DNA of 64,000 nt, taken from the sequence record MK327931.1; one strand, given 5' to 3'. Both the position numbers and the translations under genes were made by a program. Within the stretch, counting starts at the first letter, position 1, and each line of letters starts with the position of its first letter. The notes under the pieces were generated by a model, which made no database searches, was not told the DNA's origin, and saw only the letters and a program-made list of their open reading frames with translations. Positions 12,738 to 34,805 of the stretch are shown in pieces.

Positions 12738-13184
12738 TTAGTTATATGCTGTGAATAGGTCAATGTTTTTATCATCTACACTGATTAATTTACCAGTTGA
12801 ACTAACAAACACAATATTACCACCAGGGGTGATTTGAACACGCTGGTTTACTGAATATTGATCACTAAGGTTATAATTAGCCCATTCAACTACATAACGC
12901 TGTTCAACACCGTTAGTATCATATAGATAAACGTGTGTAACGTCACGCATTTTTAAACGGTCTAACAGTGTAGAGTTGTCCATGAAATCCGATGGTGTAT
13001 TGCTGCGTAATGCAATACCGAACTCACCGATAACAGTACTAATTGTCAGACCGTTTGAAAAACGGCTACAAAGAGTCTTCTCATCAGCAATATGCATCCA
13101 TAAAACATTCTTTACATCAATATCAACAAATTCACAGTTTTCAAAAACCAAACCTACTTTGGAAACTTTACCATTAAATTGCAT
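12738..13184 (-). CDS. hypothetical protein
   Basis: ORF with AGGAG SD. Confidence 0.75.
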   Translation of the reverse strand: MQFNGKVSKVGLVFENCEFVDIDVKNVLWMHIADEKTLCSRFSNGLTISTVIGEFGIALRSNTPSDFMDNSTLLDRLKMRDVTHVYLYDTNGVEQRYVVEWANYNLSDQYSVNQRVQITPGGNIVFVSSTGKLISVDDKNIDLFTAYN

Positions 13185-13629
13185 TAGTAACTCCTATTTT
13201 TTTATATTTTAAAATTAAATCACTCACTGCTTTCATTAGCTTATATGGAATAGCTAACTCTTGAACAGTACTTTCCATAAAATGTTCTTCTTCTGTATCA
13301 TAAAATGTTGAACTACAGTGTTCACAATCATCTATACTATCATAAAAAGAAGACGTAAGTTTATCAACAATGACAGTGATTTGTTTGTCAGTTTTGGTAC
13401 ATCCTACCTGAACGGTTAATCCAATATCATCAGCCTCTACACGAATTATAAACGAATTATTAGTATAGTTCAGCCAACAATCTTCACCAAAGTATACAAC
13501 ACTGTGTTTCTTCTGAAATGAAGTTGCGGTGTTAAGAACACCAATAACAACATCAACTGTTTTTTCATTTAAAATATTAGACATTTTTATTCCTGCTTCG
13601 TATGTTTCGTGAAATCTCAAATATTCCAT
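13174..13629 (-). CDS. EExFFQxST-motif family protein
   Basis: C-terminal EEEHFMESTVQE. Confidence 0.7.
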   Translation of the reverse strand: MEYLRFHETYEAGIKMSNILNEKTVDVVIGVLNTATSFQKKHSVVYFGEDCWLNYTNNSFIIRVEADDIGLTVQVGCTKTDKQITVIVDKLTSSFYDSIDDCEHCSSTFYDTEEEHFMESTVQELAIPYKLMKAVSDLILKYKKIGVTNAI

Positions 13630-13993
13630 TCAACTGCTCAACAGTTAAACCCTGTAAATCGTAAACTGTTGATAGTTGAAAGAACATCTCTGAATCTATA
13701 GTATCATGTTCAATTGGAAGACTCAAGAGGTCTTTATTAATAAAATAATCATATGTTCGAATTGTCAAAGAATCACCAAAGATATCAATGTAAAATTTCG
13801 GAACATTATGTAACGAAACATCTATTAATATGTTTTCAGCATATCTACAAGAAATTTTAGAATTATTTTTATAAGATTGGTATGAAAAATTATAAGGTTC
13901 ATCGACCAATGTGTATGATGAGGTATCACCTTCGGAAAATATTACACCACATTCAATAAGATGTGTTAACGACTTAGGTGGAATTTTTAACAT
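13577..13993 (-). CDS. EExFFQxST-motif family protein
   Basis: SEMFFQLSTVYDLQGLT. Confidence 0.75.
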   Translation of the reverse strand: MLKIPPKSLTHLIECGVIFSEGDTSSYTLVDEPYNFSYQSYKNNSKISCRYAENILIDVSLHNVPKFYIDIFGDSLTIRTYDYFINKDLLSLPIEHDTIDSEMFFQLSTVYDLQGLTVEQLNGIFEISRNIRSRNKNV

Positions 13994-13994
13994 T

Positions 13995-14423
13995 TCACTT
14001 CCTATCCTTACTCATATTACTACGGATCACCCCACTAAGAAAACATATTTTCCTTAATGTATCATAACTGATATTTGTAAGATCATGTACAAAATTCAAC
14101 TGCAAGTACATTTCTTCAGTTAATTGATTAAATGTATCATCAACATGAATGTTAGTATGTTCCGTTATATCTATTTCTATATTATTTTCCCAAATATCAA
14201 TGTTAACAGCATAGTCTGATGTATGTCTGGATTGAACTGAAATAAAAATATTATTACTGTTGTATAATGTCTCGGTGTATCCATTCAAAAATGATCCAAC
14301 GACAACATCAAAAATGCCATCTCTAATTGGATTTTTTGTTTCAAACGTATCACTACAAACTTGACGGTATACAATGTCAACATACTTATCAATTAAAGTA
14401 AACAAATAACTCATTGCATTCAC
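13995..14423 (-). CDS. EExFFQxST-motif family protein
   Basis: EEMYLQLNFVHDL. Confidence 0.7.
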   Translation of the reverse strand: MNAMSYLFTLIDKYVDIVYRQVCSDTFETKNPIRDGIFDVVVGSFLNGYTETLYNSNNIFISVQSRHTSDYAVNIDIWENNIEIDITEHTNIHVDDTFNQLTEEMYLQLNFVHDLTNISYDTLRKICFLSGVIRSNMSKDRK

Positions 14424-14432
14424 CTATATAAG

Positions 14433-14461
14433 AAAAAAGGCCGATTCATCGAATCAGCCTT
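14433..14461 (-). terminator. intrinsic terminator overlapping the start site of promoter 14464-14493
   Basis: AAGGCUGAUUC-gau-GAAUCGGCCUU-UUUU. Confidence 0.8.
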
Positions 14462-14463
14462 AA

Positions 14464-14493
14464 GTATAACACAGTAGAAGTTAAAAAGTCAAC
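14464..14493 (-). promoter_or_regulatory. sigma70-type promoter
   Basis: TTGACT-N18-TATACT with extended TG. Confidence 0.65.
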
Positions 14494-14499
14494 TTCTAA

Positions 14500-14636
14500 A
14501 TTACAGCATCCAAGAGGAATAAAAAGATACTGTTAGAGGGTAACGAATATAATGAATTTGAGGGTAATATCATTATACGTAAAAAAGTGATAGCTTCTAT
14601 ACATAAGGAGGAATCAGTACTGACTAGAAGCTATCG
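14500..14636 (-). ncRNA. candidate sRNA of four stem-loops with CCUC(C) anti-SD-like loops
   Basis: Loops UUCCUCCUUAUG, UUACCCUC, CCCUC, UUCCUCUU; a G-U pair favours the minus strand. Confidence 0.55.
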
Positions 14637-14648
14637 GGTTAAACGATT

Positions 14649-15133: not shown

Positions 15134-15499
15134 CTAATTGTGGGTTTTAACCAAACGTGAGACAGCTAGTATAGCATTAACCTCATCCAATGTCAACCCA
15201 CCAATGTCATTAATCATTGAGTACTGAAATAGTGATTCTTCAGTGTAATGGTAATCATGAGAAGCAATAAAGATTGCTGGTTTAGAGGCATCCAAAATTA
15301 TCTTTGTCATTGTACTATATATATCAAATTGATATAATAGATTTTCACCTGTATATGCTACGTAGATATTATTTGAATAGGCTGGATGTACCATTGTAAA
15401 ACCATCATAACATAATATTTTTATGTTCGGATCGTCAAAATTGCCTGTATAAAGGTTATTACAAACATCTTGCATTATACGTACTATTAGACTAGTCAT
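15134..15499 (-). CDS. EExFFQxST-motif family protein
   Basis: TEESLFQYSMINDIGGLT. Confidence 0.75.
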   Translation of the reverse strand: MTSLIVRIMQDVCNNLYTGNFDDPNIKILCYDGFTMVHPAYSNNIYVAYTGENLLYQFDIYSTMTKIILDASKPAIFIASHDYHYTEESLFQYSMINDIGGLTLDEVNAILAVSRLVKTHN

Positions 15500-15917
15500 T
15501 TAATGGATTTAGTACCTCTTCTGGAATCAACTTTTGAACTTTAAGTATAGCTTTAATGTCCTCAAATGTTAATCCTAATATGTCGTTAAGGAGGCAGTAC
15601 TGGAAGAATTTTTCTTCAGTATCAATATCGTTAACATTCAATTCAATTGATTCATCATCATAATCATAATCTTCATTATCACATTCATAACTTCTGAATA
15701 TAACTTTTTCAAAATACACATCAAATGAATAAAAATGATTATTGAATTCATAACCAAGAAAAATATTAAAACATTTACTCAAATCTGTGGTTTGATTCAA
15801 ATCTGGATCATAGCAAAATACTCTAACTTCACCAATATCTTCTAATTGTACATCATGCAGTGACCATGCGTTGTTTTTTAATACATAGTTCACCATTTTA
15901 ACAATGTTGTATGTCAT
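15492..15917 (-). CDS. EExFFQxST-motif family protein
   Basis: TEEKFFQYCLLNDILGLT. Confidence 0.75.
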   Translation of the reverse strand: MTYNIVKMVNYVLKNNAWSLHDVQLEDIGEVRVFCYDPDLNQTTDLSKCFNIFLGYEFNNHFYSFDVYFEKVIFRSYECDNEDYDYDDESIELNVNDIDTEEKFFQYCLLNDILGLTFEDIKAILKVQKLIPEEVLNPLND

Positions 15918-15923
15918 AGTGTA

Positions 15924-16013
<90 letters not shown>

Positions 16014-16016
16014 AGA

Positions 16017-16210
<194 letters not shown>

Positions 16211-16211
16211 T

Positions 16212-16268
<57 letters not shown>

Positions 16269-16270
16269 TA

Positions 16271-16821
<551 letters not shown>

Positions 16822-16830
16822 TAATACCCG

Positions 16831-17232
16831 CTAGTAGTTTAAGTCTGCGGCGTTGAATACACCAAGTGAAGTCTTACCACGTAGTTTAGGTGAAAGGACA
16901 TACTTTGTCAATTTCTTTTTACCGTACCAGCGATTGAATTCGTCTTCAGTGACATATGGGTTCTGGAAATCGTATTCGCGTTTCTTATGCAGTTCTTTAG
17001 CACGTTCTGCAATCTTGGTTCGTTGGTCTTCTGGAATGTCGAATGTATTGTTACGTTCACACCATTCGTGCTCTAATGCACCCTGAAGAAACTGTTCGGT
17101 TTCTTTGACTAGAGTGATTTTAGTCAAGCCTTTTTCGATGTTCATATAATCATCGACGTATCCATTCCAAATAACAATCTCTGGATTGCCGTCAATTTCT
17201 TGAAGCATTTTGATCAAGTCATTCTTTTTCAT
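16831..17232 (-). CDS. hypothetical protein
   Basis: ORF with AGGA SD. Confidence 0.75.
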   Translation of the reverse strand: MKKNDLIKMLQEIDGNPEIVIWNGYVDDYMNIEKGLTKITLVKETEQFLQGALEHEWCERNNTFDIPEDQRTKIAERAKELHKKREYDFQNPYVTEDEFNRWYGKKKLTKYVLSPKLRGKTSLGVFNAADLNY

Positions 17233-17240
17233 TTAAATTC

Positions 17241-17498
<258 letters not shown>

Positions 17499-17519
17499 TT
17501 ATACCTCTCATTGTTTATG

Positions 17520-17591
<72 letters not shown>

Positions 17592-17595
17592 TAAT

Positions 17596-18203
<608 letters not shown>

Positions 18204-18254
18204 ATAAACCTCACTATACGTAACTTACACCATATACGTCTGATTGTGGAATTC

Positions 18255-18279
18255 ATTATATCAGTACTGAACTATTTAG

Positions 18280-18283
<4 letters not shown>
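18255..18283 (-). promoter_or_regulatory. repeated promoter cassette copy 2
   Basis: TTGACT-aaatagttcagtactga-TATAAT. Confidence 0.85.
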
Positions 18284-18693
<410 letters not shown>

Positions 18694-18702
18694 CTTTTTT
18701 TT

Positions 18703-18864
<162 letters not shown>

Positions 18865-18868
<4 letters not shown>

Positions 18869-19029
18869 AATCGTACCAGTAGTTCAATTAAGTACATTTC
18901 ATATGCTGGATCGTTGATAAGTTTATCATACAGATGTGGCTCTGAAATGAATTCCCAATGATACTTTAGCCATCTACCGATACCCGAATATCTAAAATTA
19001 ATGTCATTCATCCATTCTTCATGTGTCAT
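18865..19029 (-). CDS. MTHEEW-family small protein (54 aa)
   Basis: MTHEEWMNDINFRYSGIGRWLKYHWEFISE...; ATGA coupling. Confidence 0.75.
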
Positions 19030-19190
19030 AATCGTACCATTATTTCAATAAAGAACCACGGATACACTTCATGATTCATAAGTTTATCGTATTCTGCTGG
19101 GTCTGATATGATTTCCCAATGATACTTTAGCCAACTACCGATACCCGAATATCTAAAATTAATGTCATTCATCCATTCTTCATGCGTCAT
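19026..19190 (-). CDS. MTHEEW-family small protein (54 aa)
   Basis: MTHEEWMNDINFRYSGIGSWLKYHWEIISD...; near-identical 5' half to 18865-19029. Confidence 0.75.
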   Translation of the reverse strand: MTHEEWMNDINFRYSGIGSWLKYHWEIISDPAEYDKLMNHEVYPWFFIEIMVRL

Positions 19191-19213
19191 GGTTTTTAAC
19201 CTTTAATTAAAAT

Positions 19214-19290
19214 TGGCCGAGGTAGAGGGACTTGAACCCCCAACCTAGAGATTAGAATTCTCTTGCACTATCCAATTGTGCTATACCCCG
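19214..19290 (-). tRNA. trnR: tRNA-Arg(UCU)
   Basis: CGGGGTA/TACCTCG-G-CCA, loop AT-TCT-AA. Confidence 0.92.
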
Positions 19291-19294
19291 TATT

Positions 19295-19410
<116 letters not shown>

Positions 19411-19443
19411 ATGTTATGTCCCATTATATAATGAATTAATGAT

Positions 19444-19770: not shown

Positions 19771-19862
19771 CTCTTAATATATCATAATGTACCTGACGAA
19801 TGCCATTCCCAAAGCAGTCATGTTCTTTATGCTGTTTGGACATCCATTCTTCGTGTGTCATT

Positions 19863-19879: not shown

Positions 19880-20198
<319 letters not shown>

Positions 20199-20203
20199 TC
20201 TTA

Positions 20204-20638: not shown

Positions 20639-20820
20639 CTCTTAATATCCATAACGGCTATACTAAAATATGTACCAAAATCATCACAATTGATAATGTT
20701 GTTATAGTACTCAATTGGGTTACGCAATGATATATACAATTCAAGCTTAAAATAGTATATATCTGCTGCATTTATATTATAGTGTAGATTAAACCACTCA
20801 TCAAATGTCTTAGGCTGCAT
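20635..20820 (-). CDS. small protein, possible distant MTHEEW relative
   Basis: KTFDEWF N-terminus; similar length. Confidence 0.55.
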   Translation of the reverse strand: MQPKTFDEWFNLHYNINAADIYYFKLELYISLRNPIEYYNNIINCDDFGTYFSIAVMDIKR

Positions 20821-21214
20821 TATATTTATCTTTATAAAAATCCATGATTTTAGTCAACAGTACTGCAATCGTATAATCTAAATCAGGATAAAGTAAATTG
20901 TACTGAAATTCTTCCTCAACACTATAGTTAGTGGTACAGTACTGGTAATCTTTATAACCTATTGAAAAATAATTCGGATACAATGTACAACGAAAGCGAT
21001 AAGCTTCATCTGTCATATAATCATTGTATTCAACACAGAAGTATAGTGATTTTGAATTTAATTCGATAAGCTCAACGAATCCATCAGGTAATGAATGGTT
21101 ATAAATTACTGAATCTTCATTAAACCATTCATAGTATTTTTCCAAAAAATCACTAATGGATACATCCAGACTTTGTATAGGTGGAGTTATGATAATTTGA
21201 ACTTCTTTATTCAT
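20810..21214 (-). CDS. EExFFQxST-motif family protein (divergent)
   Basis: SVEEEFQYNLLYPDL. Confidence 0.65.
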   Translation of the reverse strand: MNKEVQIIITPPIQSLDVSISDFLEKYYEWFNEDSVIYNHSLPDGFVELIELNSKSLYFCVEYNDYMTDEAYRFRCTLYPNYFSIGYKDYQYCTTNYSVEEEFQYNLLYPDLDYTIAVLLTKIMDFYKDKYNAA

Positions 21215-21714
21215 TTCGACCCCTTACTATATTTCACGTATGGGTTATCATACAGATCATAACTTTTTTGTGCACGTTCTTTTCGGCGTTCATACATGAT
21301 TCTATCATACTCTTTAGCTTTCTGATTTGCTTCATTATACAATTTTAAAATTAGCAAAAATGCATCAAGATCGGGATAGTTTGCCGGATTGATAGTACTC
21401 AGCATAAATCGTTCTTCTTCAGTTCTAGCTAAGTCAAATTCATACTTAATAGTTTTATACCCACTCCATTTATATATATGCGTTACTTTATTAGTAAGTA
21501 CATTATATTCAACGAAGTCAGTACTACCATCAAGTACACGAGTAATCTTAATAGATGTACCAATGACAATCTGCACAGAACTCATTTCTGAAGTTTTAAA
21601 GTAATAAATGTTATTACGGCGAAGATTAACTTCTCGATCTCCAATGCGAACATGCTTAATAACTTCCATTAATGGTTCTGGGACACCACGAATCGGCATG
21701 TTAGTATTCCTCAA
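21211..21714 (-). CDS. EExFFQxST-motif family protein
   Basis: TEEERFMLSTINP. Confidence 0.7.
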   Translation of the reverse strand: MRNTNMPIRGVPEPLMEVIKHVRIGDREVNLRRNNIYYFKTSEMSSVQIVIGTSIKITRVLDGSTDFVEYNVLTNKVTHIYKWSGYKTIKYEFDLARTEEERFMLSTINPANYPDLDAFLLILKLYNEANQKAKEYDRIMYERRKERAQKSYDLYDNPYVKYSKGSK

Positions 21715-22317: not shown

Positions 22318-22710
22318 TTACCAGCATGTTTTCATAACTTCTGTGATGTAAATCATTTTATCTTTAAGTTCGTGAGGGATGCAAATTTCACCTGGGTTTA
22401 ACGTTGTGTTCTTTTGAAACTCATCTTCTTCGGAATCAGCCAGGTAAAATGGGTGTGTCACAAAGGTATCATCAACTGTACGCTTATTTGGTTTCATTAA
22501 TGCATCATGATTTATAAAATAATAGGCATCAATATCAGGACGGTAATACAAACAATCAACCTTGAAGTTCGGGTGTAACCATAAAGACAACGAATAGGTC
22601 ATTTGGTTACCAATTTGTCTTGGTCCAGTAGTAATTGTATTGATGTTATTTTTATCTTGCACCATTTCATAAATGAAATCTATCATTTCGTGTAGTTCTG
22701 ATTCAGTCAT
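22318..22710 (-). CDS. EExFFQxST-motif family protein (divergent)
   Basis: SEEDEFQKNTTLNP. Confidence 0.65.
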   Translation of the reverse strand: MTESELHEMIDFIYEMVQDKNNINTITTGPRQIGNQMTYSLSLWLHPNFKVDCLYYRPDIDAYYFINHDALMKPNKRTVDDTFVTHPFYLADSEEDEFQKNTTLNPGEICIPHELKDKMIYITEVMKTCW

Positions 22711-27089: not shown

Positions 27090-27533
27090 TTACTCCTTAA
27101 AGTAGATATCACGAATTTGTTTAATCATCTCTAACTCTTGAAGTCCTATCATACCAAAGTCTTCTTGTATTGTCAACTGCTGAAAGTACATTTCCTCTAA
27201 ATTATCATAAGGAATATCCACTAATGATAAAGGAACACGTTCACCACGGTATAGCAGATCTTCAACTAAAAGTTTTAAAATCATGATAGAAAATGAATCT
27301 TTTTGGATATGAAATTTGTAAAATGTCTGGTTAGTACTGAACATTGTATTTGATGGATTGAAACCCATTTCAACAAATACTGTATCTTTATCATTATGTG
27401 TGACATATGTACATCTTGAATTCGCAAGAACTTTAGATTTTGGGAAATAAAAATCACCCATCAACTTCTGTCGTTTCCAATCCTCGTATACAACTGGATG
27501 CTTAACCTTCTTCAATTGGTGCAGTACTGTCAT
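27090..27533 (-). CDS. EExFFQxST-motif family protein
   Basis: LEEMYFQQLTIQEDFG. Confidence 0.75.
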   Translation of the reverse strand: MTVLHQLKKVKHPVVYEDWKRQKLMGDFYFPKSKVLANSRCTYVTHNDKDTVFVEMGFNPSNTMFSTNQTFYKFHIQKDSFSIMILKLLVEDLLYRGERVPLSLVDIPYDNLEEMYFQQLTIQEDFGMIGLQELEMIKQIRDIYFKE

Positions 27534-27913
27534 AGTTTTTTCCAGTCCAATGAATCGAAATCGATTTGCTCAGGATTATCAACAGCGACAACTCGTGCAT
27601 TATGAAGAGTTTCAAAGTAGCCGTTCCACGGTGTTCGTAATGGAACTGTCACATCGCCAACTTTAACCAAGAATGAATATTCTGGTGATATTGGGTCAAA
27701 CCACTCTTTTTGTTTAGCATTTTCAACGATAGTTTCGTGTTCTTTAGTATAGCAATTATCTTGCTTCATATAAAACACCCAATGCTCTTTTAGGCACTGT
27801 AAAGCAGCAACTGCTTCCTCTTTAGAAGACCATTGAATATCAATTGTATTAAGAACGTCATAACAATTTTCAGTGTCCCCTGTAGTATAATGTACTTCAA
27901 TGCTGTATTTCAT
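27530..27913 (-). CDS. hypothetical protein
   Basis: ORF in packed operon. Confidence 0.75.
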   Translation of the reverse strand: MKYSIEVHYTTGDTENCYDVLNTIDIQWSSKEEAVAALQCLKEHWVFYMKQDNCYTKEHETIVENAKQKEWFDPISPEYSFLVKVGDVTVPLRTPWNGYFETLHNARVVAVDNPEQIDFDSLDWKKL

Positions 27914-28368
27914 TAATCATCGCCTTTTAGTAATTTACAAATTTCAATCATATGATAATAACATGTATTCCAAAATTGTCCATTAGTACTTCCAACATCA
28001 TGCACAGTACTTTGCTGGAACACATATTCATCGTTGAACATCATTTTAATATCATCAATGTAAAATTCTGGTTTTGAATCATTATTGTATTCAATACTCG
28101 TTTCACCATCTGGATCAAGTGAAATTGATGATATGTCGTGAATTCCTCTCGGATTTGTTGGATAAATTCTCAACGTAAGAGGATAGAAGTCTGGATCGGT
28201 TTCATAGGTATATTCGATTATGTAATAACCATCACCAGTAATTGATTGATATTTAAATGTAGTTTCAATTGAATTTGAGATGTTATATCCCAGTTTCTTT
28301 ATCTCATGTAGATGTGATAATATTTTATGTAAAGATCCTAAAACATGAATCAAATTATCAATTTTCAT
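27913..28368 (-). CDS. EExFFQxST-motif family protein
   Basis: NDEYVFQQSTVHDVG. Confidence 0.75.
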   Translation of the reverse strand: MKIDNLIHVLGSLHKILSHLHEIKKLGYNISNSIETTFKYQSITGDGYYIIEYTYETDPDFYPLTLRIYPTNPRGIHDISSISLDPDGETSIEYNNDSKPEFYIDDIKMMFNDEYVFQQSTVHDVGSTNGQFWNTCYYHMIEICKLLKGDD

Positions 28369-28907
28369 TTACGATCCTTTGAAAAGTTCAGTTTAAAAGT
28401 TTTACCAAATTCCATTGTAGCTTTACCCAGATTGTTAATATTTTCTTTCAACATTTCTTGCATCTTCCTAATACTTTCAATCCAGGCTTCTTCTTCGATA
28501 CGAAGAATTGGTCGCAATCGTTCCTGAATATCGTTAAAACGTGTATTGAGTTCAACCAATGATTCATATGTGAAATCTTTCATATCGATAATAGTACTTC
28601 TTTGAAAGAATTCTTCTTCAGACAAATTACTTAAAATGATTTTATCACGACCAATAGATAATGTCAATTCATCATCTTTATTTTTTTTAATTACAATACT
28701 AATAGGTGTTTTTAATGTAATACAAATATCATGATTATTAAATGTTTCAGTTTGGTTTGACATTCTGAATTGAAGTTTCCCAGATAAAGCATGTACTGGT
28801 GATGGTTTCTTTTTACCAGTAATAACATCTTCCCATGAATCGAGAATATTATTAATAATTTTAACATAAGGAATTGGCATATATGCACCTATGAAAAATC
28901 CACGCAA
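28365..28907 (-). CDS. EExFFQxST-motif family protein
   Basis: SEEEFFQRSTIIDM. Confidence 0.75.
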   Translation of the reverse strand: MRGFFIGAYMPIPYVKIINNILDSWEDVITGKKKPSPVHALSGKLQFRMSNQTETFNNHDICITLKTPISIVIKKNKDDELTLSIGRDKIILSNLSEEEFFQRSTIIDMKDFTYESLVELNTRFNDIQERLRPILRIEEEAWIESIRKMQEMLKENINNLGKATMEFGKTFKLNFSKDRK

Positions 28908-28922
28908 TGCGTGGATTTGTAA

Positions 28923-29453
28923 TTATTCAAGTATAGTAATTTCAATTAAACGAATTTCGATAAACTCGTTTTCAGTTTCCCATGACGTGCCAAATTTCTT
29001 TTCAAGTTCAGATTTCACATCACTTTTAAATTTTCCCATAGTATTAGGAATAATTTGTTTGGTTAATTTGTCGTAACCACAATAAAACATAGGTTTCTCC
29101 CTTCGAGATATTAGCTGAACAAAATCTTTTGGATATGCAGGTATGTTATGCATCACTTCATGAATACACTCAGTACTTGAATCTTGTACTTTGTACATTA
29201 CATTAAGTTTACCTCTGAAATTTGCGGTCATATCAACAATAGTTCCTTTACCCGATTTAAGTAAAGTTCCATTCTTTGAATGAGAGCAATAAAATACCTC
29301 ATCACCAATATTAGGATAATACAAATTAAATTCTAATTCAGATTTTACAGCCAGCCGTTTGAAACTTTCTGTACGTTTTATATAAGTTTGGTATTTGTTT
29401 ATGTTCAAAAGAATATCTCTCTTAGTAAATGTGATATAACTGGCATAGTCCAT
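28923..29453 (-). CDS. hypothetical protein
   Basis: ORF in packed operon. Confidence 0.7.
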   Translation of the reverse strand: MDYASYITFTKRDILLNINKYQTYIKRTESFKRLAVKSELEFNLYYPNIGDEVFYCSHSKNGTLLKSGKGTIVDMTANFRGKLNVMYKVQDSSTECIHEVMHNIPAYPKDFVQLISRREKPMFYCGYDKLTKQIIPNTMGKFKSDVKSELEKKFGTSWETENEFIEIRLIEITILE

Positions 29454-30265
29454 CCATTCCCAAGCATTTTGTATGCTTGTGTCTTACTAGACACTTTAAA
29501 GAAATCTTCAGGAACACCCTGTAATTTACAACATTCTACTACACTTAAGTGTCTATAGTCAATATTTCTTTTGCCATTCTCTAATAGATATTGACGACTG
29601 ATCACTGGGTCACGAAACACCAATTGTCGTCTGGATTTATTAAAGTACTGGTTACAATCACCACCTTTAAAATAGTTAGCATCTATACAGTACGAAGCGG
29701 TTCTGTCAGTGTACCAACCATCTTCAATAATATCTTGAAGTTTAGGTGCATTGGATAATGCAGGTGGTATAAAAAGCTTATCAGTACTGTACCAGTAATA
29801 TCTCTGCCTGAAGTGAGGCGTATAATGCTGGGAGTTTATCAGTACTGGCGTGATTCCTAAAATACTATTAATGTATTCTTTGAAATCTTCCTTCATTTTA
29901 ACATTTTCAAACAGAAATTTCAAGTTAGGATTGAGACTTTTGATATGATCAAAAATTTCAACCATTACTAAAAATAACTGCCCACGTATATCATTTAAAC
30001 CACCCTGTTTACCTGCAACTGACCAGGCTTGACATGGGAAACCACCCATTAATAAATCTATTTTATCCCACTCAATATCCCATTCTCTCCACTTAGTTAC
30101 ATCACCCAATTGGATAATATCAGGAAAGTTAGCTTGAGATTCAGCTATTGCGTACTTGTCAATTTCGGATGAATAATATTTTTCAACTGGGATACCAGCA
30201 TCTTGCAATGCCATATATCCCACACTCATTCCATTAAAAAGAGAAAGTACTCGGATAGGTTTCAT
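29405..30265 (-). CDS. C5 cytosine DNA methyltransferase (orphan)
   Basis: Motif I (LSLFNG), catalytic GFPCQ, FENV, QRYYW, LGNGW. Confidence 0.92.
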   Translation of the reverse strand: MKPIRVLSLFNGMSVGYMALQDAGIPVEKYYSSEIDKYAIAESQANFPDIIQLGDVTKWREWDIEWDKIDLLMGGFPCQAWSVAGKQGGLNDIRGQLFLVMVEIFDHIKSLNPNLKFLFENVKMKEDFKEYINSILGITPVLINSQHYTPHFRQRYYWYSTDKLFIPPALSNAPKLQDIIEDGWYTDRTASYCIDANYFKGGDCNQYFNKSRRQLVFRDPVISRQYLLENGKRNIDYRHLSVVECCKLQGVPEDFFKVSSKTQAYKMLGNGWTMPVISHLLREIFF

Positions 30266-30317
30266 ATAAAATCCTTTTTATATTGTTAAGGTACTATAAT
30301 ATATTATAGCATCTTAT

Positions 30318-30608
30318 TTAGAAATCTTCCAAACTTTTTTCATCACACCATCGTGATGTACAGATGATTGCAGATGCCAGAATTGAAGCACTTGCACGTC
30401 CTCCACCAAGTAAGTACTGGCTAATTACACCAATCATATTGAACACTTTATCATACTCGGTTAGTTGTTCAAAACCTTTCTTCCAATGCTGATATTCTTC
30501 TTCTGTGACATTAAACTCACCATCAAGTTCCTTTAAAATCTTTTTAAGCACAGCACTATGTTCACTCATCATCATCTCCATATCGTTCGTCATAAAAATC
30601 ATCATCAC
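30318..30608 (-). CDS. hypothetical protein
   Basis: ORF in packed operon. Confidence 0.65.
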   Translation of the reverse strand: MMMIFMTNDMEMMMSEHSAVLKKILKELDGEFNVTEEEYQHWKKGFEQLTEYDKVFNMIGVISQYLLGGGRASASILASAIICTSRWCDEKSLEDF

Positions 30609-30647
30609 GATCTAATGGTTCTTTTGGCTTTTCAGACATATATTTCC

Positions 30648-30908
30648 TCACATGGTAAAGGTATTATCACCATCCATATCTTCATCAGTTGCTTCAGCTA
30701 ATGTCTTGATTGTAAGTAATCCACGCTTCACGTACAACATGAAGACCTTTTCATAATTACCAAACATAATCTCAGGTGACATGTAATTCTCTGTTACAAT
30801 GACGATTGGACGGCCCTGTGAAAGCATACGAAACATAGTACGATATTTGTCAAATGTACGAAATTCATCCATGTTCATCATGTGGCGTTTACGAACTACT
30901 TTAGTCAT
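30648..30908 (-). CDS. hypothetical protein
   Basis: ORF with AGG SD. Confidence 0.7.
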   Translation of the reverse strand: MTKVVRKRHMMNMDEFRTFDKYRTMFRMLSQGRPIVIVTENYMSPEIMFGNYEKVFMLYVKRGLLTIKTLAEATDEDMDGDNTFTM

Positions 30909-30922
30909 CTTATTACCTTTAG

Positions 30923-31363
30923 TTAATTGAACTCTACTTCTGGATAATGATTATAGAACATCTCACGAACTGCGTCAAGATGTTCTTGAAATTGTTTTAT
31001 ATCTTCTAATGATGGTGCATCAATAACAGTACTAAGTTGAAACAACGATTCTTCTGTGTTATATAGTGACATATCAAATGAGTTATTGTTGTCATCAGTT
31101 ATGATATTATCACAAATTTCGTAAGTGTCAATACAAACATCATCAAGTGTTGTATTATCATATACAGTGTATACGAATACAAAAATAAAAGAAGAATGTT
31201 CTTTACCATAACGCGGTGGGTCATATGTCACATAGCATTTGTGGTCAAATGTATCGAGTTCCATAGACACCACCCCAGCTTCACGATATTCATTAGTTTC
31301 ACTGGTAAGATCCGGTATTGATGTTATCGAAAGTAAGTGGAGAAATTTACTTGGATTTAGCAT
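30923..31363 (-). CDS. EExFFQxST-motif family protein
   Basis: TEESLFQLSTVIDA. Confidence 0.75.
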   Translation of the reverse strand: MLNPSKFLHLLSITSIPDLTSETNEYREAGVVSMELDTFDHKCYVTYDPPRYGKEHSSFIFVFVYTVYDNTTLDDVCIDTYEICDNIITDDNNNSFDMSLYNTEESLFQLSTVIDAPSLEDIKQFQEHLDAVREMFYNHYPEVEFN

Positions 31364-31818
31364 TTCACCACCATTGGATTTTGCGACTGTATATTAAAAA
31401 GGGATAATACAAAAGTACTCAATTTTTCGAAACAATCTACTAATACATTTAACTCATCATAACTAACACCAATTTCACGAATAAGCGATTGTTGAAAGAA
31501 TCCTTCTTCGGTTAACGTTAAACTACTAACCTCAGTTATGTTATAATAACTGTGGGATGTTGTGGTTGATATTAGTTGTATTGCAATCGTATCTGATGTT
31601 GTGTTGTACAGATATAAATATTTTGTTTTTCTTTCCAATGGATCTATACATGAAAGATCGATCATGTCATAGGTTTTTCCAATAAAAATATTACAATCAT
31701 CTGACAATTCACAACAAATGCGTATATGTTCTTTCGGGTCATGAACACGTTGTGTGTCAAATTCACATGACATTGCAATTTCAAAATGATTTTTTATTTC
31801 GTCAACATTCATCTGCAC
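31357..31818 (-). CDS. EExFFQxST-motif family protein
   Basis: TEEGFFQQSLIREIG. Confidence 0.75.
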   Translation of the reverse strand: MQMNVDEIKNHFEIAMSCEFDTQRVHDPKEHIRICCELSDDCNIFIGKTYDMIDLSCIDPLERKTKYLYLYNTTSDTIAIQLISTTTSHSYYNITEVSSLTLTEEGFFQQSLIREIGVSYDELNVLVDCFEKLSTFVLSLFNIQSQNPMVVKC

Positions 31819-32186
31819 CCACCATTAATTCTTATATTTGTATAGTTTAATGCTTTTTTAATAATACCAATTTCTGTAATTCCTATTACATTTTTCTCAA
31901 TCAATGACAATTGGAATAGTTCCTCTTCGGAAATATCAATACTGTGGATTCTTGTACAATAATCGTTGAAGTCATATACATATCGTATTGTATAGTCGTT
32001 TATAGAAACTGATACAATTGCAATCCCATCATGGATGTAAGTTAGTTCATTTGAGTATCTATTAAAAATTAACCTATCTGGTGAACCTATTGGTAGTTGA
32101 AATGTATTTCTAGTATCTTGAACAATAACAAAATCATCATCTATATTTCTACTCAGAACACCCAAAATATCATATATAGTAGTCAT
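31809..32186 (-). CDS. EExFFQxST-motif family protein
   Basis: SEEELFQLSLIEKN. Confidence 0.75.
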   Translation of the reverse strand: MTTIYDILGVLSRNIDDDFVIVQDTRNTFQLPIGSPDRLIFNRYSNELTYIHDGIAIVSVSINDYTIRYVYDFNDYCTRIHSIDISEEELFQLSLIEKNVIGITEIGIIKKALNYTNIRINGGCR

Positions 32187-32187
32187 G

Positions 32188-32592
32188 TTATTCTTTACCT
32201 TCAGCAGTTCTGATAATTTTCATAACTTCTCTGGATAGTGCGTATATTTTTTTATAGTACTCAAATGTAACTGAACCAAAATCATTAATAGTACTAGCCA
32301 TGAAGAACGATTCTTCTGTATATAGTTCATTTGACAAAGCAACCAGTTCTTGGTGAAATTTTGCGTCCTTCCAATAACGAAATTCAAAAACAAATTGTCC
32401 GTCATGACCGACTCTACAACATTCAGAACGATCACTGTCTACACAGCTAAACACAATATCCCTTTCAGAGTCGTACCAGATATTTCCAATATTTGTTTCA
32501 ATAACAGCATAATCAATTTTTTTAGAATTTGGAATTAAACCTTTTTTCACCAGCACTAAACTGGTATTATCAATATCTAGTAAACTTACCAT
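32188..32592 (-). CDS. EExFFQxST-motif family protein
   Basis: TEESFFMASTINDFG. Confidence 0.75.
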   Translation of the reverse strand: MVSLLDIDNTSLVLVKKGLIPNSKKIDYAVIETNIGNIWYDSERDIVFSCVDSDRSECCRVGHDGQFVFEFRYWKDAKFHQELVALSNELYTEESFFMASTINDFGSVTFEYYKKIYALSREVMKIIRTAEGKE

Positions 32593-32593
32593 A

Positions 32594-33004
32594 TCAATTC
32601 CCCATTACTAAAGTGTTTTTAATCTCCAACAATTCACTATACATATTCTTCAATTGTAATATATCTTCAAAAGTAATACCACCAAGATCATCAACTAATG
32701 AACGTTGGAATAAAGATTCACTTGTTTGTAATGTATCTAAATCGGTGATTTTTAATAAAGAACTTGGATTAAGTGTTTCGACTAGTAGTATGTTTTTGTA
32801 TGGTACATATGTGATCTTGATGTTCTTTTTATAATTAATCTTATAAAATCGCATAATTGACGATTCATCACTTAGTTGGATAATTGGGTCGTCTTGATCA
32901 TTAGACCACCATACAGTACTAGTCATATGATTGACGTGGTGGTTCAATTCTGATATGTCCAAATCTAAAAAATATTTTAGTTCATTGTGTAAATCTAAAC
33001 TCAT
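32594..33004 (-). CDS. EExFFQxST-motif family protein
   Basis: SESLFQRSLVDDLGGIT. Confidence 0.75.
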   Translation of the reverse strand: MSLDLHNELKYFLDLDISELNHHVNHMTSTVWWSNDQDDPIIQLSDESSIMRFYKINYKKNIKITYVPYKNILLVETLNPSSLLKITDLDTLQTSESLFQRSLVDDLGGITFEDILQLKNMYSELLEIKNTLVMGN

Positions 33005-33059
33005 AAATTTATCCTCAATGCAGCATCATCATGTATTGTAGGATAAACCCACAATAATG

Positions 33060-33455
33060 TCAAGATGTGAAATAATTATACCAGTAATATAGTTCTTTTA
33101 ATTCTTCAGTACTGAACAATACTTCTTCTATTGTAGATTGTTGAAAGTGATATTCATCATTTAGATACATAGAAATATTACTATATACTTTCCTATTGTA
33201 TTGACATAAAAAAGAAGTTTTTTGATTAATGTATTCCGTAAATGTTAATTTATCTAACTCAATATCGAATGATAATTTAATAATATGACTATTATCATTT
33301 ACATACATTAGTTTCTTTGAAAAATGATCAATTGTAATATATTCTTTATGAGAGAACTGAAATATATTATTAAATTTATTACCATTTGTGCTTCTAAATT
33401 TTTCAAGGTAATAAGAAAGTGGTTTAATTATTGAAGTTCCAATATTGTTCTTCAT
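33060..33455 (-). CDS. EExFFQxST-motif family protein
   Basis: NDEYHFQQSTIEEV. Confidence 0.75.
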   Translation of the reverse strand: MKNNIGTSIIKPLSYYLEKFRSTNGNKFNNIFQFSHKEYITIDHFSKKLMYVNDNSHIIKLSFDIELDKLTFTEYINQKTSFLCQYNRKVYSNISMYLNDEYHFQQSTIEEVLFSTEELKELYYWYNYFTS

Positions 33456-33476
33456 ATATCCTCAATTTTAGATAAG

Positions 33477-33500
33477 AAAAATGCCCCGAAGATCGGGGCA
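33477..33500 (-). terminator. intrinsic terminator
   Basis: UGCCCCG stem followed by UUUUUC on the minus strand. Confidence 0.85.
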
Positions 33501-33501
33501 G

Positions 33502-33612
33502 TACTAAAATGATTTTGTACCAAAAGGGGAATAAGAACAAAATGAAAATATAATAACGCATCATTATTATGATGTAAGGGAGGAAAGTAACATGATATGT
33601 TAACCATTTCTG
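33502..33612 (-). ncRNA. candidate sRNA with anti-SD-like motifs (alternatively plus-strand minigenes)
   Basis: AATAAATA at 33616-33623, then UUUCCUCCCUUAC and a hairpin loop CUUAUUCCCCUUUU, then the terminator. Confidence 0.4.
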
Positions 33613-33618
33613 GTATAT

Positions 33619-34170
33619 TTATTTATCATTTAATTCTTTAAGTTGGGTTTGTATATCTTTAGTTATATTTCGAATTTTCTTAAAGCAATAAACACTATCG
33701 TCCAATTCGATTTTAAGTTCATGTGTAAATGCATACAGAAGTTCAGCAAATACTAAATCTTGACGCATCCAGTTTCCATCTTTATATAAAGTCATTACAC
33801 AATATGGGCATTCACTATTAGAAGTTTGCTTTCCAATAAAAACACTTTGAATTGATTCATGCTTAAAGCCAATAAAACTTTCATTTATTTTTTTAATTTC
33901 AGTACTGATATCGAATTTAGCACTGGTGTTGATTGCAAAAATTTTATTCCCACTTTCATCAGTATTGATATTGAGTTCAATATCACTACCTAGTTTACGT
34001 ACTGCTAGAGTATAAAGAAGTAATTCATACATGTCGTAACTTGTTACATTACCATTTGGTGCAATTACATCAACACTAACACCGTGCATTTTTACTTCTG
34101 TATTAAATCCATCTTTATCAGAAAGAAAATCAGTGATTTGCTTTGTAAGGATTTTAATTTGGTCTATCAT
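33619..34170 (-). CDS. hypothetical protein
   Basis: ORF with AGGG SD. Confidence 0.75.
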   Translation of the reverse strand: MIDQIKILTKQITDFLSDKDGFNTEVKMHGVSVDVIAPNGNVTSYDMYELLLYTLAVRKLGSDIELNINTDESGNKIFAINTSAKFDISTEIKKINESFIGFKHESIQSVFIGKQTSNSECPYCVMTLYKDGNWMRQDLVFAELLYAFTHELKIELDDSVYCFKKIRNITKDIQTQLKELNDK

Positions 34171-34190
34171 ATTTCATTTCCTTATGTGAT

Positions 34191-34215
34191 AAAAGCCTCC
34201 ATAATGGAGGCTTTT
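34191..34215. terminator. intrinsic terminator
   Basis: AAAAGCCTCCA-taa-TGGAGGCTTTT. Confidence 0.85.
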
Positions 34216-34223
34216 GTATTTAC

Positions 34224-34805
34224 TTAGAGAGATTCTTCGTATTCAGCAACAATCTCAACCATTTCATTAATGAACTTGATGTGAGAATGTGTCACTGTAC
34301 GGAAGTCGTAAACAAGTGACTGTTGGAAAAATACATCTTCATCAAGAGAACCATCAAAGTTCAAATCAATGTTTTCATCGTCATTGCTTGGTGCAACTTT
34401 AATATTCAGAAGATTTTCATCAATGAACTTGATGTGAGAATGTGTCACTGTACGGAAGTCGTAAACAAGTGACTGTTGGAAAAATACATCTTCATCAAGA
34501 GAACCATCAAAGTTCAAATCAATGTTTTCATCGTCATTGCTTGGTGCAACTTTAATATTCAGAAGATTTTCATCAACTGCAAGTTTTACAACACAACCCA
34601 GTGCAATGGCAAGAACATATGCTGGTTTCTTAGCTTTTTCATTACGGAATGGTGCACGTAGAGCACAAAAAGTACTGCTAATCTCATCATTTGGTTCTTT
34701 GTATTTAACATTGACCATTAGTTCTTCGATTTTGACGCTCTCAATAACACGACCAGTTTCTGGAGCGAAGAAAGAATGTTCACGGATAGTTTGTTCGATA
34801 TTCAT
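34224..34805 (-). CDS. EExFFQxST-motif family protein with the motif domain duplicated
   Basis: EDVFFQQSLVYDF occurs twice. Confidence 0.75.
   Translation of the reverse strand: MNIEQTIREHSFFAPETGRVIESVKIEELMVNVKYKEPNDEISSTFCALRAPFRNEKAKKPAYVLAIALGCVVKLAVDENLLNIKVAPSNDDENIDLNFDGSLDEDVFFQQSLVYDFRTVTHSHIKFIDENLLNIKVAPSNDDENIDLNFDGSLDEDVFFQQSLVYDFRTVTHSHIKFINEMVEIVAEYEESL
34271..34576. repeat. exact in-frame tandem duplication, 2 x 153 bp
   Basis: 34271-34423 identical to 34424-34576. Confidence 0.97.

What the first reader, a model, noticed from the sequence alone, without database searches (positions are those of the whole stretch)
13174..34805. Twenty divergent proteins share one C-terminal EExFFQxSTxxD peptide
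Members: 13174, 13577, 13995, 15134, 15492, 17820, 18280, 20810, 21211, 22318, 27090, 27913, 28365, 30923, 31357, 31809, 32188, 32594, 33060, 34224. Almost all are 117-193 aa. Their N-terminal parts are barely alignable by eye, but they retain (T/S)EExFFQxS(T/L)hxDhG near the C-terminus, followed by an amphipathic helix. Inference: a common docking or sorting tag, or a scaffold carrying diversified faces. That could be an arsenal of anti-defence or host-binding effectors, or proteins co-packaged or co-targeted through one partner.
Basis: partly seen in the sequence, partly recalled or inferred. Interest (0 to 1): 0.75.

Follow-up and report, generated by a model that had tools for sequence, protein, structure and literature searches.

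The report
Fifty-copy small-protein family in jumbo phage
The twenty genes are real members of an undescribed family of small acidic proteins that fills about 9% of the genes of Rak2-like giant E. coli phages. The shared "peptide" is a built-in helix that holds a common fold together under a fast-changing surface, so the family is a promising but untested candidate for a host-takeover or counter-defence repertoire.

Summary
The window is Escherichia phage vB_EcoM_G17, a 371-kb Asteriusvirus. All 20 listed minus-strand ORFs carry the motif about 100 residues from the N-terminus. A profile separates them cleanly from all other ORFs (E<=1e-9 against 0.08).

- **Family size.** A complete Asteriusvirus genome holds about 50 copies in two arrays, and a RaK2-like Klebsiella phage holds 26-33. 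GAP32 and CBB also have members.
- **Spread.** 154 clusters at 50% identity exist in public data. DNA-pattern hits in viral contigs fall almost only in 345-378 kb phage genomes. Hits in bacterial genomes are at chance level.
- **Fold.** AlphaFold2 (pLDDT 93) gives one compact domain: a variable beta-meander plus two C-terminal helices. The motif is the first helix with its N-cap. Its three variable positions lie at i, i+4 and i+8.
- **Known relatives.** There is no Pfam, NCBIfam or PDB relative. PHROGs splits the family into more than 20 "unknown" families.
- **Packaging and expression.** None of about 47 phAPEC6 orthologues is in that phage's virion proteome. Near-consensus sigma-70 promoters are strongly enriched on the coding strand.
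- **Selection.** Orthologues are syntenic and under purifying selection, and the N-terminal part changes fastest.

Best reading: a conserved scaffold with diversified faces, expressed early and not packaged. The function is still inferred.

The parts
13174..13584 (-). Family member G17_00165 (136 aa as annotated; the longest ORF runs to 13629, 151 aa)
   Evidence: Profile E 6e-12. Motif Q/M position is residue 118 of the long ORF.
13577..13993 (-). Family member G17_00166 (138 aa). Overlaps its downstream neighbour by 8 nt.
   Evidence: Profile E 2e-13.
13995..14414 (-). Family member G17_00167 (139 aa as annotated). It is the most divergent motif in leave-one-out tests.
   Evidence: (leave-one-out E 0.41).
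15134..15499 (-). Family member G17_00171 (121 aa)
   Evidence: Its N-terminal part is also similar to that of 15492.
15492..15917 (-). Family member G17_00172 (141 aa). Overlaps the next gene by 8 nt.
17820..18203 (-). Family member G17_00181 (127 aa). Its motif is one residue shorter.
   Evidence: A sigma-70-like site scoring 11 of 12 lies at 18283-18255, just upstream.
18280..18633 (-). Family member G17_00182 (117 aa, the shortest)
   Evidence: A sigma-70-like site scoring 11 of 12 lies at 18692-18665, just upstream.
20810..21214 (-). Family member G17_00194 (134 aa). Its motif is one residue shorter.
   Evidence: Leave-one-out E 0.034.
21211..21699 (-). Family member G17_00195 (162 aa as annotated). 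It has a basic C-terminal extension and pI 9.3.
22318..22710 (-). Family member G17_00197 (130 aa). This is the second protein modelled.
   Evidence: AF2 model: pLDDT 76, pTM 0.71, motif helix at 94-103.
27090..27533 (-). Family member G17_00211 (147 aa)
27913..28368 (-). Family member G17_00213 (151 aa)
28365..28880 (-). Family member G17_00214 (171 aa as annotated). It has a long helical C-terminal extension and pI 8.6.
30923..31363 (-). Family member G17_00219 (146 aa, net charge -21)
31357..31812 (-). Family member G17_00220 (151 aa as annotated)
31809..32186 (-). Family member G17_00221 (125 aa)
32188..32592 (-). Family member G17_00222 (134 aa). It is the best match to the family profile and the first protein modelled.
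   Evidence: AF2 pLDDT 93.2, pTM 0.84: seven strands at 13-87, motif helix at 93-102, second helix at 110-130. The RaK2 homologue's independent model has TM 0.88.
32594..33004 (-). Family member G17_00223 (136 aa)
   Evidence: A sigma-70-like site scoring 11 of 12 lies at 33063-33035, just upstream.
33060..33455 (-). Family member G17_00224 (131 aa)
   Evidence: A terminator-like hairpin at 33500-33482 precedes it.
34224..34805 (-). Family member G17_00226 (193 aa). It holds two motif copies because of an internal duplication. The relatives' version is about 142 aa.
   Evidence: (phrog_23322, 142 positions, two stretches).
34262..34576 (.). In-frame tandem duplication inside the 34224 gene (period 153 bp, 2.1 copies, 99% identical). 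Not seen in the nine closest relatives checked, which lack about 156 bases of the 27000-34900 stretch.
   Evidence: In one search the nine relatives H2-H10 match that stretch over 7744-7748 record bases in 2 pieces; G17 itself matches over 7901 bases in one piece.

Best explanation
The 20 genes belong to a lineage-specific, heavily expanded family of small, mostly acidic, non-virion proteins. The family has about 50 copies per Asteriusvirus genome and is confined to Rak2-like jumbo phages.

**Structure (predicted).** Each protein is predicted to be one compact alpha/beta domain. Its N-terminal antiparallel beta-sheet region of about 90-110 residues has diverged beyond sequence recognition. Two conserved C-terminal helices follow it. 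It is a structural element, not a free peptide.

**Shown.**
- Family membership and copy number.
- Restriction to this phage clade.
- Constraint at the protein level rather than the DNA level.
- Purifying selection, with a faster-changing N-terminal part.
- Absence from one virion proteome.

**Inferred.**
- The genes are transcribed early by host RNA polymerase from sigma-70-type promoters.
- The variable sheet face of each paralogue binds a different host or defence target. The family would then serve as a host-takeover or counter-defence repertoire built on one scaffold.
For: **Membership and size.** (20 in the window). (3-4 more in G17 at 20-62 kb). (50-52 in the complete relative OR844650.1, in two arrays, all on one strand). 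(26-33 in a RaK2-like Klebsiella phage).

**Spread.**
- 154 clusters at 50% identity reach E<=1e-3 among 1.84 billion representatives, with the same architecture.
- The DNA pattern gives 11 stretches on 10 IMG/VR contigs. Nine of the 10 contigs are 345-378 kb. Nine of the 11 stretches are confirmed by a strong profile hit (E<=6e-7), one reaches only E 2.8e-4 and one is cut at the locus edge. They include GAP32 and CBB.
- In 185,579 species genomes there are only 37 hits, against about 35 expected by chance, and none has the family architecture.

**Fold.**
- AF2 model of the 32188 protein: pLDDT 93.2, pTM 0.84, with the motif as helix 93-102.
- Independent BFVD models of RaK2, GAP32 and Asteriusvirus paralogues at 12-30% identity match it with probability 1.00 and TM 0.47-0.88.
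- The second model (22318 protein) keeps the sheet, motif helix and final helix.

**Nature of the motif.**
- Column shares show a helix-periodic pattern, variable only at -3, +1 and +5. Q and M exchange at position 0.
- Synonymous codons vary freely, and Ser is coded by both AGY and TCN.

**Not packaged.** No orthologue is in the phAPEC6 virion list.

**Early expression (inferred).** There are 28 near-consensus sigma-70 sites on the coding strand against 1 on the other. Simulation gives 3.0 +/- 1.65. Several sit directly upstream of members. The CBB authors suspect that a comparable block of their genome, marked by RpoD-like promoters, holds the early genes (PMC5259590).

**Functional genes.** 16 orthologues are syntenic in TH47 at 48-98% identity. 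dN/dS is 0.03-0.81 (median 0.22). dN in the N-terminal part is 0.10, against 0.048 in the motif and 0.045 in the tail.

**Acidity.** Median pI is 4.7, against 5.66 for neighbouring ORFs.
Against: - No experiment or homology ties any member to a function. There is no match to Pfam, NCBIfam, PDB sequences or PDB folds, which include solved anti-defence proteins.
- Homology of the N-terminal parts cannot be shown by sequence or by profile-profile comparison.
- The second model has only moderate confidence. It starts with a helix and has fewer strands, so the N-terminal topology may vary.
- Only the best two of five models of the first protein exceed pLDDT 90. I could not inspect coordinates, so burial of motif residues is inferred from periodicity alone.
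- Early expression rests on consensus matches. The phage also encodes its own sigma factor, and I found no transcriptome for this genus.
- dN/dS below 1 gives no sign of strong diversifying selection at the whole-gene level.
- The 90-95% conservation of polar residues at -5, -4, +2 and +6 is more than a helix cap usually needs. It could point to a shared ligand or partner.
Confidence: 0.5

Rival explanations
1. **Shared docking or oligomerisation module.** The conserved helix-loop-helix is an interface. It would either plug about 50 different N-terminal parts into one common phage or host hub protein, or let paralogues form homo- or hetero-oligomers, for example ring-shaped trimers as in the p32/MAM33 family.
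For: - Polar residues at -5 and -4 (E 94-95%), +2 (S 90%) and +6 (D/N/E 97%) are conserved across subfamilies whose N-terminal parts are unalignable. No conserved partner residue exists elsewhere in the chain.
- About three quarters of the helix circumference is conserved, more than packing on one sheet face needs (inference).
- The weak best PDB fold hits include p32/gC1qR (E 0.025-0.08, probability 0.54-0.85). That protein is acidic, with seven antiparallel strands and two C-terminal helices, and forms trimers (topology from established knowledge of PDB entry 1p32).
Against: - The helix is predicted with very high confidence as part of a monomeric compact fold.
- Q and M exchange at the most conserved position, which argues against a specific polar contact.
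- The conserved polar residues could satisfy each other inside the module (N-caps of both helices and the loop).
- TM-scores to p32 are only about 0.3, and there is no Pfam MAM33 match.
Confidence: 0.25
2. **DNA-mimic or anti-restriction family.** The proteins are acidic decoys that imitate nucleic acid and block host nucleases or DNA-binding defence proteins. This is a special case of the binder repertoire.
For: - 16 of 20 members have pI below 5 and net charge of -6 to -21.
- Array 2 is also acidic.
- The setting looks early and the proteins are not in the virion.
- A cytosine methyltransferase gene lies inside the array.
Against: - There is no fold or sequence likeness to solved DNA mimics in the PDB.
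- Four window members are neutral or basic.
- Fifty paralogues are not needed for a generic decoy.
- Acidity is common among small early phage proteins.
Confidence: 0.1
3. **Co-packaged internal or virion proteins.** The proteins are sorted into the capsid through the shared motif, as a capsid-targeting tag.
For: Only the shared motif itself. Some unrelated paralogous families of these phages, the RCC1-like 'DNA condensation' proteins, are in the virion.
Against: - None of about 47 phAPEC6 orthologues is among the 62 virion proteins.
- RaK2 virion proteins map to two structural clusters (PMC3622015).
- The motif is internal and helical, not an N-terminal cleavable tag.
- The promoters look like host sigma-70 early promoters.
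Confidence: 0.04
4. **Decaying duplicates or a nucleic-acid signal.** The ORFs are decaying or selfish tandem duplicates without function, or the repeated motif is a DNA or RNA signal rather than a protein feature.
For: The tandem arrangement, the very low pairwise identity, and one recent internal duplication.
Against: - Orthologues are kept in synteny across species, with dN/dS of 0.03-0.81.
- All reading frames are intact across Asteriusvirus, RaK2-like, GAP32 and CBB genomes.
- Synonymous sites in the motif vary as in the rest of the genes, and Ser uses both codon families.
Confidence: 0.03

Closest known systems
Unnamed paralogues noted in Rak2-like phage genome papers: RaK2 ('nearly 10% of gene products are paralogues', PMC3622015) and CBB (22 paralogous ORFs, PMC5259590)
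   Same: Same phage clade and the same phenomenon. Part of those paralogues are probably members of this family.
   Different: Those papers define no family, motif, fold or copy number. Pairwise similarity links only 3 of the 20 window members, so most members could not have been counted. PHROGs splits the family into more than 20 families of unknown function.
Hyperplastic regions of the T4 superfamily and the SPO1 host-takeover module, which are blocks of small early genes (established knowledge)
   Same: Dense one-strand blocks of small genes behind strong host-type promoters. They are absent from virions, are mostly of unknown function, and are thought to adapt the phage to its host.
   Different: Those blocks hold mostly unrelated ORFans. 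Here about 50 genes are one family with one fold and one conserved helix.
Single-fold multigene families of large eukaryotic DNA viruses, such as the poxvirus Bcl-2-like proteins (established knowledge; analogy only)
   Same: One small scaffold is kept while sequences diverge beyond recognition. Many paralogues exist per genome.
   Different: No homology and a different fold and host. For the poxvirus family the targets are known; here none is.
p32 / gC1qR / MAM33 fold (PDB 1p32, 6szw)
   Same: Acidic small protein with a run of consecutive antiparallel strands followed by two C-terminal helices. These are the best, though weak, Foldseek hits. The 22318 model also has an N-terminal helix.
   Different: E is only 0.025-0.08 and TM about 0.3. 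The second model does not recover the hit. No Pfam MAM33 match. The trimeric state is untested.
RCC1-like 'DNA condensation' protein family of the same phages (11 copies in phAPEC6, PMC7247149)
   Same: Another lineage-specific expansion in the same genomes, also arranged in tandem.
   Different: Proteins of about 40 kDa, on the opposite strand, each with its own terminator, and found in virions. Unrelated in sequence.

Membership tests
The family itself (operational definition from this work) | Match to the 40-column profile of the motif helix, the loop and the start of the second helix | tested here: met
   All 20 members reach E<=1e-9 against 0.08 for the next ORF. In leave-one-out tests 17 of 20 reach E<0.01.
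The family itself (operational definition from this work) | Architecture: the motif 60-180 residues (typically about 100) from the N-terminus, a tail of 26-78 residues, and a total length of about 100-240 aa | tested here: met
The family itself (operational definition from this work) | One shared fold (beta-sheet plus two C-terminal helices) in all members | tested here: inconclusive
   One model at pLDDT 93 and one at 76 with a different N-terminal start. Independent BFVD models of low-identity paralogues match at TM 0.47-0.88. Only 2 of 20 members were modelled here, and the N-terminal parts are not alignable.
Any Pfam, NCBIfam or PDB-represented family | Score above the curated cut-off, or a significant E-value | tested here: not met
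   Pfam: nothing above cut-off for any of the 20 members or for 10 long relatives. NCBIfam: nothing. PDB profile search: best E 0.19. Foldseek against PDB: no hit with E<=0.001 for either model.
PHROGs families | Full-length match to a PHROG profile | tested here: met
   Nineteen of the 20 match a PHROG over essentially their full length (E 1e-54 to 1e-118), 18 PHROGs in all. The 15134 and 15492 proteins share phrog_17453, and the 13577 protein matches it only at E 1e-11. All are of 'unknown function', with weak cross-hits between them. PHROGs does not unite the family.
p32 / MAM33 | Sequence match to the MAM33 domain | tested here: not met
   No Pfam hit.
p32 / MAM33 | Fold match (seven-strand antiparallel sheet, one N-terminal and two C-terminal helices) | tested here: inconclusive
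   Foldseek E 0.025-0.08, probability 0.54-0.85, TM about 0.3 for model 1. Probability 0.03 for model 2.
p32 / MAM33 | Homotrimeric ring | not testable with these tools
   No multimer prediction or coordinates were available.
Capsid-targeted internal proteins (T4 IP type) | Presence in purified virions | tested here: not met
   None of about 47 orthologues is in the phAPEC6 list of 62 virion proteins.
Capsid-targeted internal proteins (T4 IP type) | N-terminal targeting sequence removed by the prohead protease | tested here: not met
   The only shared element lies about 100 residues into the protein, in a predicted helix. The N-termini are not conserved.
Early host-takeover gene blocks (T4 hyperplastic regions, SPO1 module) | Small genes in one-strand blocks behind host-type promoters | tested here: met
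   All members are on one strand. There are 28 near-consensus sigma-70 sites on the coding strand against 1 on the other, with a simulated mean of 3.0.
Early host-takeover gene blocks (T4 hyperplastic regions, SPO1 module) | Measured early transcription and an effect on the host | not testable with these tools
   No transcriptome for this genus was found.

The most novel reading that the evidence does not exclude
The conserved helix-loop-helix is a common adaptor. About 50 different variable sheet 'heads' per genome would dock through it onto one hub, either a phage or host protein or each other in mixed oligomers. That would give the phage a combinatorial, repertoire-style recognition system against host defences. 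No such system is known for any phage.
Probability: 0.12. Interest if true: 0.88.

Novelty: new member of a known kind. Interest (0 to 1): 0.58.

Why it matters
**Scale.** One fold accounts for roughly 9% of the genes and about 6% of the DNA of a clade of 350-kb coliphages that are being characterised for therapy. It is still annotated only as 'hypothetical protein', and protein-family resources split it into more than 20 separate families of unknown function.

**Use.** Recognising it as one family turns some fifty ORFans per genome into a single tractable question. One structure and a handful of binding partners would inform all of them.

**If the proposed function holds.** If the members are diversified binders of host proteins, the family is a rich source of new host-takeover or counter-defence proteins on a fold with no solved relative.

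**If it does not.** The result still shows how far a phage paralogue family can diverge while keeping one 13-residue structural signature.

Tried and rejected
- **Sequence homology of the N-terminal parts.** phmmer all-against-all and hhalign between eight subfamily profiles found nothing significant beyond one pair. Fold sharing therefore rests on predicted structures.
- **Known families.** Pfam, NCBIfam, PDB sequence profiles and Foldseek against the PDB all returned nothing.
- **Domain fusions in long members.** None found.
- **The search for related loci with the 103-sequence alignment.** An IUPAC DNA pattern search replaced it.
- **The search for homologous proteins with one member.** Found only 7 close orthologues. 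The exhaustive profile search was needed to reach the rest of the family.
- **Literature.** Six searches and six papers gave no description of the family and no transcriptome for the genus.
- **Faster evolution than neighbours.** The identity difference is not significant (82% against 85%, p=0.39). dN/dS is only modestly higher (0.22 against 0.09, p=0.04), and the neighbour set includes some spurious ORFs.
- **Gene gain and loss, using Salmonella phage SD-6_S16.** That record looks fragmentary in this region, with 9 family hits against 10 in G17. I drew no conclusion from it.
- **TH47 comparison.** The TH47 locus did not reach four members at window positions 13-15.5 kb.
- **A DNA or RNA signal behind the motif.** Rejected on codon evidence.

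Full report
**Where the window comes from.** The stretch 27000-34900 is 100% identical to Escherichia phage vB_EcoM_G17 (MK327931.1, 370,817 bp, Asteriusvirus) and 97-99% identical to 121Q, PBECO4, phAPEC6 and others. Window position 1 corresponds to G17 position 62,001. This is a Rak2-like jumbo phage of E. coli. Nearly all genes of the window lie on the minus strand. The record annotates every one of the 20 ORFs as 'hypothetical protein'.

**Checking the observation.** All 20 ORFs exist as listed.
- A loose regular expression over all six frames of the 64 kb finds the 20 ORFs plus two weak unrelated hits.
- When the proteins are anchored on the Q/M position, the motif lies at residue 89-118 in 19 proteins, followed by 26-44 residues (63 and 78 in two with basic helical extensions).
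- The 34224 protein has the motif twice. The cause is an in-frame 153-bp tandem duplication whose copies are 99% identical. The closest relatives lack it (phrog_23322 has 142 positions).
- A 40-column profile built on the anchored block scores the 20 at E<=1e-9 and the next ORF at 0.08.
- Left out one at a time, 17 of 20 are recovered at E<0.01, and the other three at 0.03-0.4.
- Three further profiles leave exactly 20 in the window.

- BLASTP at E<1e-4 links only three of them.
- The N-terminal parts alone link only 15134 with 15492.
- hhalign between N-terminal profiles of eight subfamilies finds nothing significant.

**The family is much larger than the finding.**
- Scanning G17 from 1 to 62 kb adds three to four longer members: G17_00061, 00116 and 00132, plus G17_00082, which is marginal (E 0.002 with the first profile and not recovered with the second).
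- I fetched the complete genome of a 96.5% identical relative, OR844650.1, and scanned each piece separately. It holds 52 ORFs at E<=0.01, and 50 after an iterated search at E<=0.001. All lie on one strand. About 21 are in the array that this window covers, 26 in a second array some 230 kb away, and a few are solitary.
- Array-2 members have the same architecture with a longer tail (median length 160 aa, motif at about 109, tail 49, pI 4.9).
- A profile search of 1.84 billion representative proteins gives 154 clusters at 50% identity with E<=1e-3. They are 110-170 aa long for the most part, with the motif at a median of residue 103. Sixty-two of the 156 proteins held at that point have no BLASTP hit to any window member. 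Those looked up are metagenomic, some from contigs of 174-362 kb, and none carries a name.

**Restriction to one phage clade.** I back-translated one form of the motif into an IUPAC DNA pattern.
- The pattern hits 11 stretches on 10 of 2.9 million IMG/VR contigs. Nine of the 10 contigs are 345-378 kb.
- The profile confirms nine of the 11 stretches with a strong hit (E<=6e-7). One stretch, on a 24.5-kb contig, reaches only E 2.8e-4, and one gives no hit because the match is cut at the locus edge.
- Two of the contigs are Cronobacter phage GAP32 and Pectobacterium phage CBB. Two others are uncultured phages of about 355 kb.
- The same pattern in one genome of each of 185,579 bacterial and archaeal species gives 37 scattered hits, against about 35 expected by chance. 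None has the family architecture.

**What the motif is.**
- AlphaFold2 on the 32188 protein, using an alignment of 5 orthologues and 19 paralogues, gives pLDDT 93.2 and pTM 0.84. The five models scored 93, 90, 78, 75 and 65.
- The model has seven consecutive antiparallel strands (residues 13-87), a helix at 93-102, a loop, and a helix at 110-130. The motif is that first helix with the residue before it.
- Shares by column over 174 sequences (a slash means alternative residues with their combined share):

| Position | Residue shares |
|---|---|
| -6 | T/S 84% |
| -5 | E 95% |
| -4 | E 94% |
| -2 | F/Y/L 90% |
| -1 | F 99% |
| 0 | Q 81%, M 19% |
| +2 | S 90% |
| +3 | T/L 95% |
| +4 | V/I/L 96% |
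| +6 | D/N/E 97% |

- Positions -3, +1 and +5 are variable (2.9-3.4 bits). They are spaced i, i+4, i+8, which is one stripe of a helix.
- This is the signature of an N-capped, largely packed helix (inference; I could not inspect coordinates).
- The Q/M exchange at the best-conserved position argues against a catalytic or specific polar role.
- The constraint acts on the protein, not the DNA. Synonymous codons at conserved positions vary in genome-typical proportions, and Ser is coded by AGT seven times and by TCN seven times.
- A second model, of the divergent 22318 protein, has pLDDT 76 and pTM 0.71. It keeps a sheet, the motif helix (94-103) and the last helix, but starts with a helix and shows fewer strands.
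- Independent BFVD models of paralogues with 12-30% identity match model 1 at probability 1.00 and TM 0.47-0.88. All are uncharacterised proteins of RaK2, GAP32 or Asteriusvirus.

**No known relative.**
- Pfam gives nothing above cut-off for any member or for long relatives.
- NCBIfam gives nothing.
- A profile search of PDB sequences gives a best E of 0.19.
- Foldseek against the PDB gives no hit at E<=0.001 for either model. The weak top hits of model 1 include p32/gC1qR, which shares the topology and the acidity, but with TM about 0.3.
- PHROGs assigns 19 of the 20 a full-length match, to 18 different PHROGs in all, every one of unknown function.
- Papers on RaK2 and CBB mention unnamed paralogues ('nearly 10% of gene products'; 22 ORFs) without defining a family. 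I found no description of this family.

**Context and likely role.**
- *Not packaged.* The profile hits in phAPEC6 map to gp083c-gp134c, gp290c, gp291c, gp318c and gp379c-gp465c, plus two unannotated ORFs. None is among the 62 virion proteins of that phage (PMC7247149).
- *Probably early.* The window holds 28 sigma-70 sites scoring at least 11 of 12 on the coding strand and 1 on the other. A first-order Markov simulation gives 3.0 +/- 1.65. Several sit just upstream of members at 18280, 17820 and 32594. Arrays are punctuated by terminators, and neighbouring genes overlap by 4-8 nt.
- *Acidic.* Median pI is 4.7, against 5.66 for neighbouring ORFs.
- *Maintained genes.* Sixteen members have syntenic orthologues in phage TH47 at 48-98% identity. 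dN/dS is 0.03-0.81, with a median of 0.22 against 0.09 for neighbours (p=0.04).
- *Fast N-terminal part.* The N-terminal part accumulates about twice the non-synonymous change of the motif and the tail (0.10 against 0.048 and 0.045; p=0.004 and 0.011).

**Interpretation.**
- *Shown.* This is one large, old, clade-restricted family. It has a protein-level conserved helix-loop-helix, a rapidly diverging N-terminal sheet region, purifying selection, and no presence in one virion proteome.
- *Inferred.* The genes are expressed early, and the variable face of each paralogue binds a different host or defence protein.
- *Still open.* A shared partner or an oligomer interface. The near-invariance of several polar residues is more than a helix cap usually requires.

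By kind, this is a lineage-specific multigene family of a large virus, which is a known phenomenon. As a family and a fold it appears undescribed.

Noticed in passing
Whole window, minus strand (for example 958-930, 6249-6221, 16327-16300, 24212-24184, 26619-26591, 40854-40826, 59034-59006): There are 28 near-consensus (at least 11 of 12) sigma-70-type promoter sites on the coding strand and 1 on the other strand. Simulation gives 3.0 +/- 1.65. This suggests that host RNA polymerase reads this whole 64-kb block.
   Followed up: partly
window 18707-20641, minus strand: A second, unrelated mini-family of five ORFs of about 55-65 aa (best pair 61% identical) lies interleaved with tRNA genes.
   Followed up: partly
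window 15934-20176: Seven annotated tRNA genes (Thr, Asn, Met, Ser, Arg, Ser, Gly) sit between family members inside the array.
   Followed up: no
window 34262-34576: A very recent in-frame 153-bp tandem duplication (99% identical copies) doubles the motif region of one member in G17. The closest relatives checked do not have it.
   Followed up: yes
L002 (phAPEC6 MK817115.1) 2097-2528 and 15260-15736: Two family ORFs with strong profile scores have no CDS in the phAPEC6 annotation. They are orthologues of window 13577 and 27090.
   Followed up: partly
L003 (G17 25,040-39,077), plus strand; possibly window 9451-10605: A tandem array of about 1.1-kb plus-strand genes, each followed by a terminator. 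They are partly annotated as RCC1-like 'DNA condensation' proteins, and several are virion proteins in phAPEC6. The lone plus-strand gene at window 9451-10605 may belong to this array; I did not check.
   Followed up: no
L003 (G17 21,700-24,900 and 40,200-43,000): Further runs of equal-sized small genes (about 60 aa and about 115 aa) look like additional tandem paralogue sets.
   Followed up: no
L071 (CBB NC_041878.1) 6194-6547: The gene next to the CBB family member (gp371) is annotated 'virion structural protein' (gp370, similar to RaK2_00182). It gives no family profile hit.
   Followed up: partly
window 13577/13584, 15492/15499, 21211/21214, 28365/28368, 31357/31363, 31809/31812: Adjacent family genes overlap by 4-8 nt at their stop and start codons. 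This is consistent with co-transcription and translational coupling.
   Followed up: no
window 29405-30265 and 3689-4654: A Dcm-type cytosine methyltransferase gene lies in the middle of the family array. A phage sigma-factor gene lies 9 kb downstream of the array on the same strand.
   Followed up: no
L072 (Salmonella phage SD-6_S16, OR699182.1): In this 319-kb record the homologous stretch holds 9 family hits instead of 10, and several neighbouring genes are annotated in pieces. The record may be of lower quality, and I drew no conclusion from it.
   Followed up: partly
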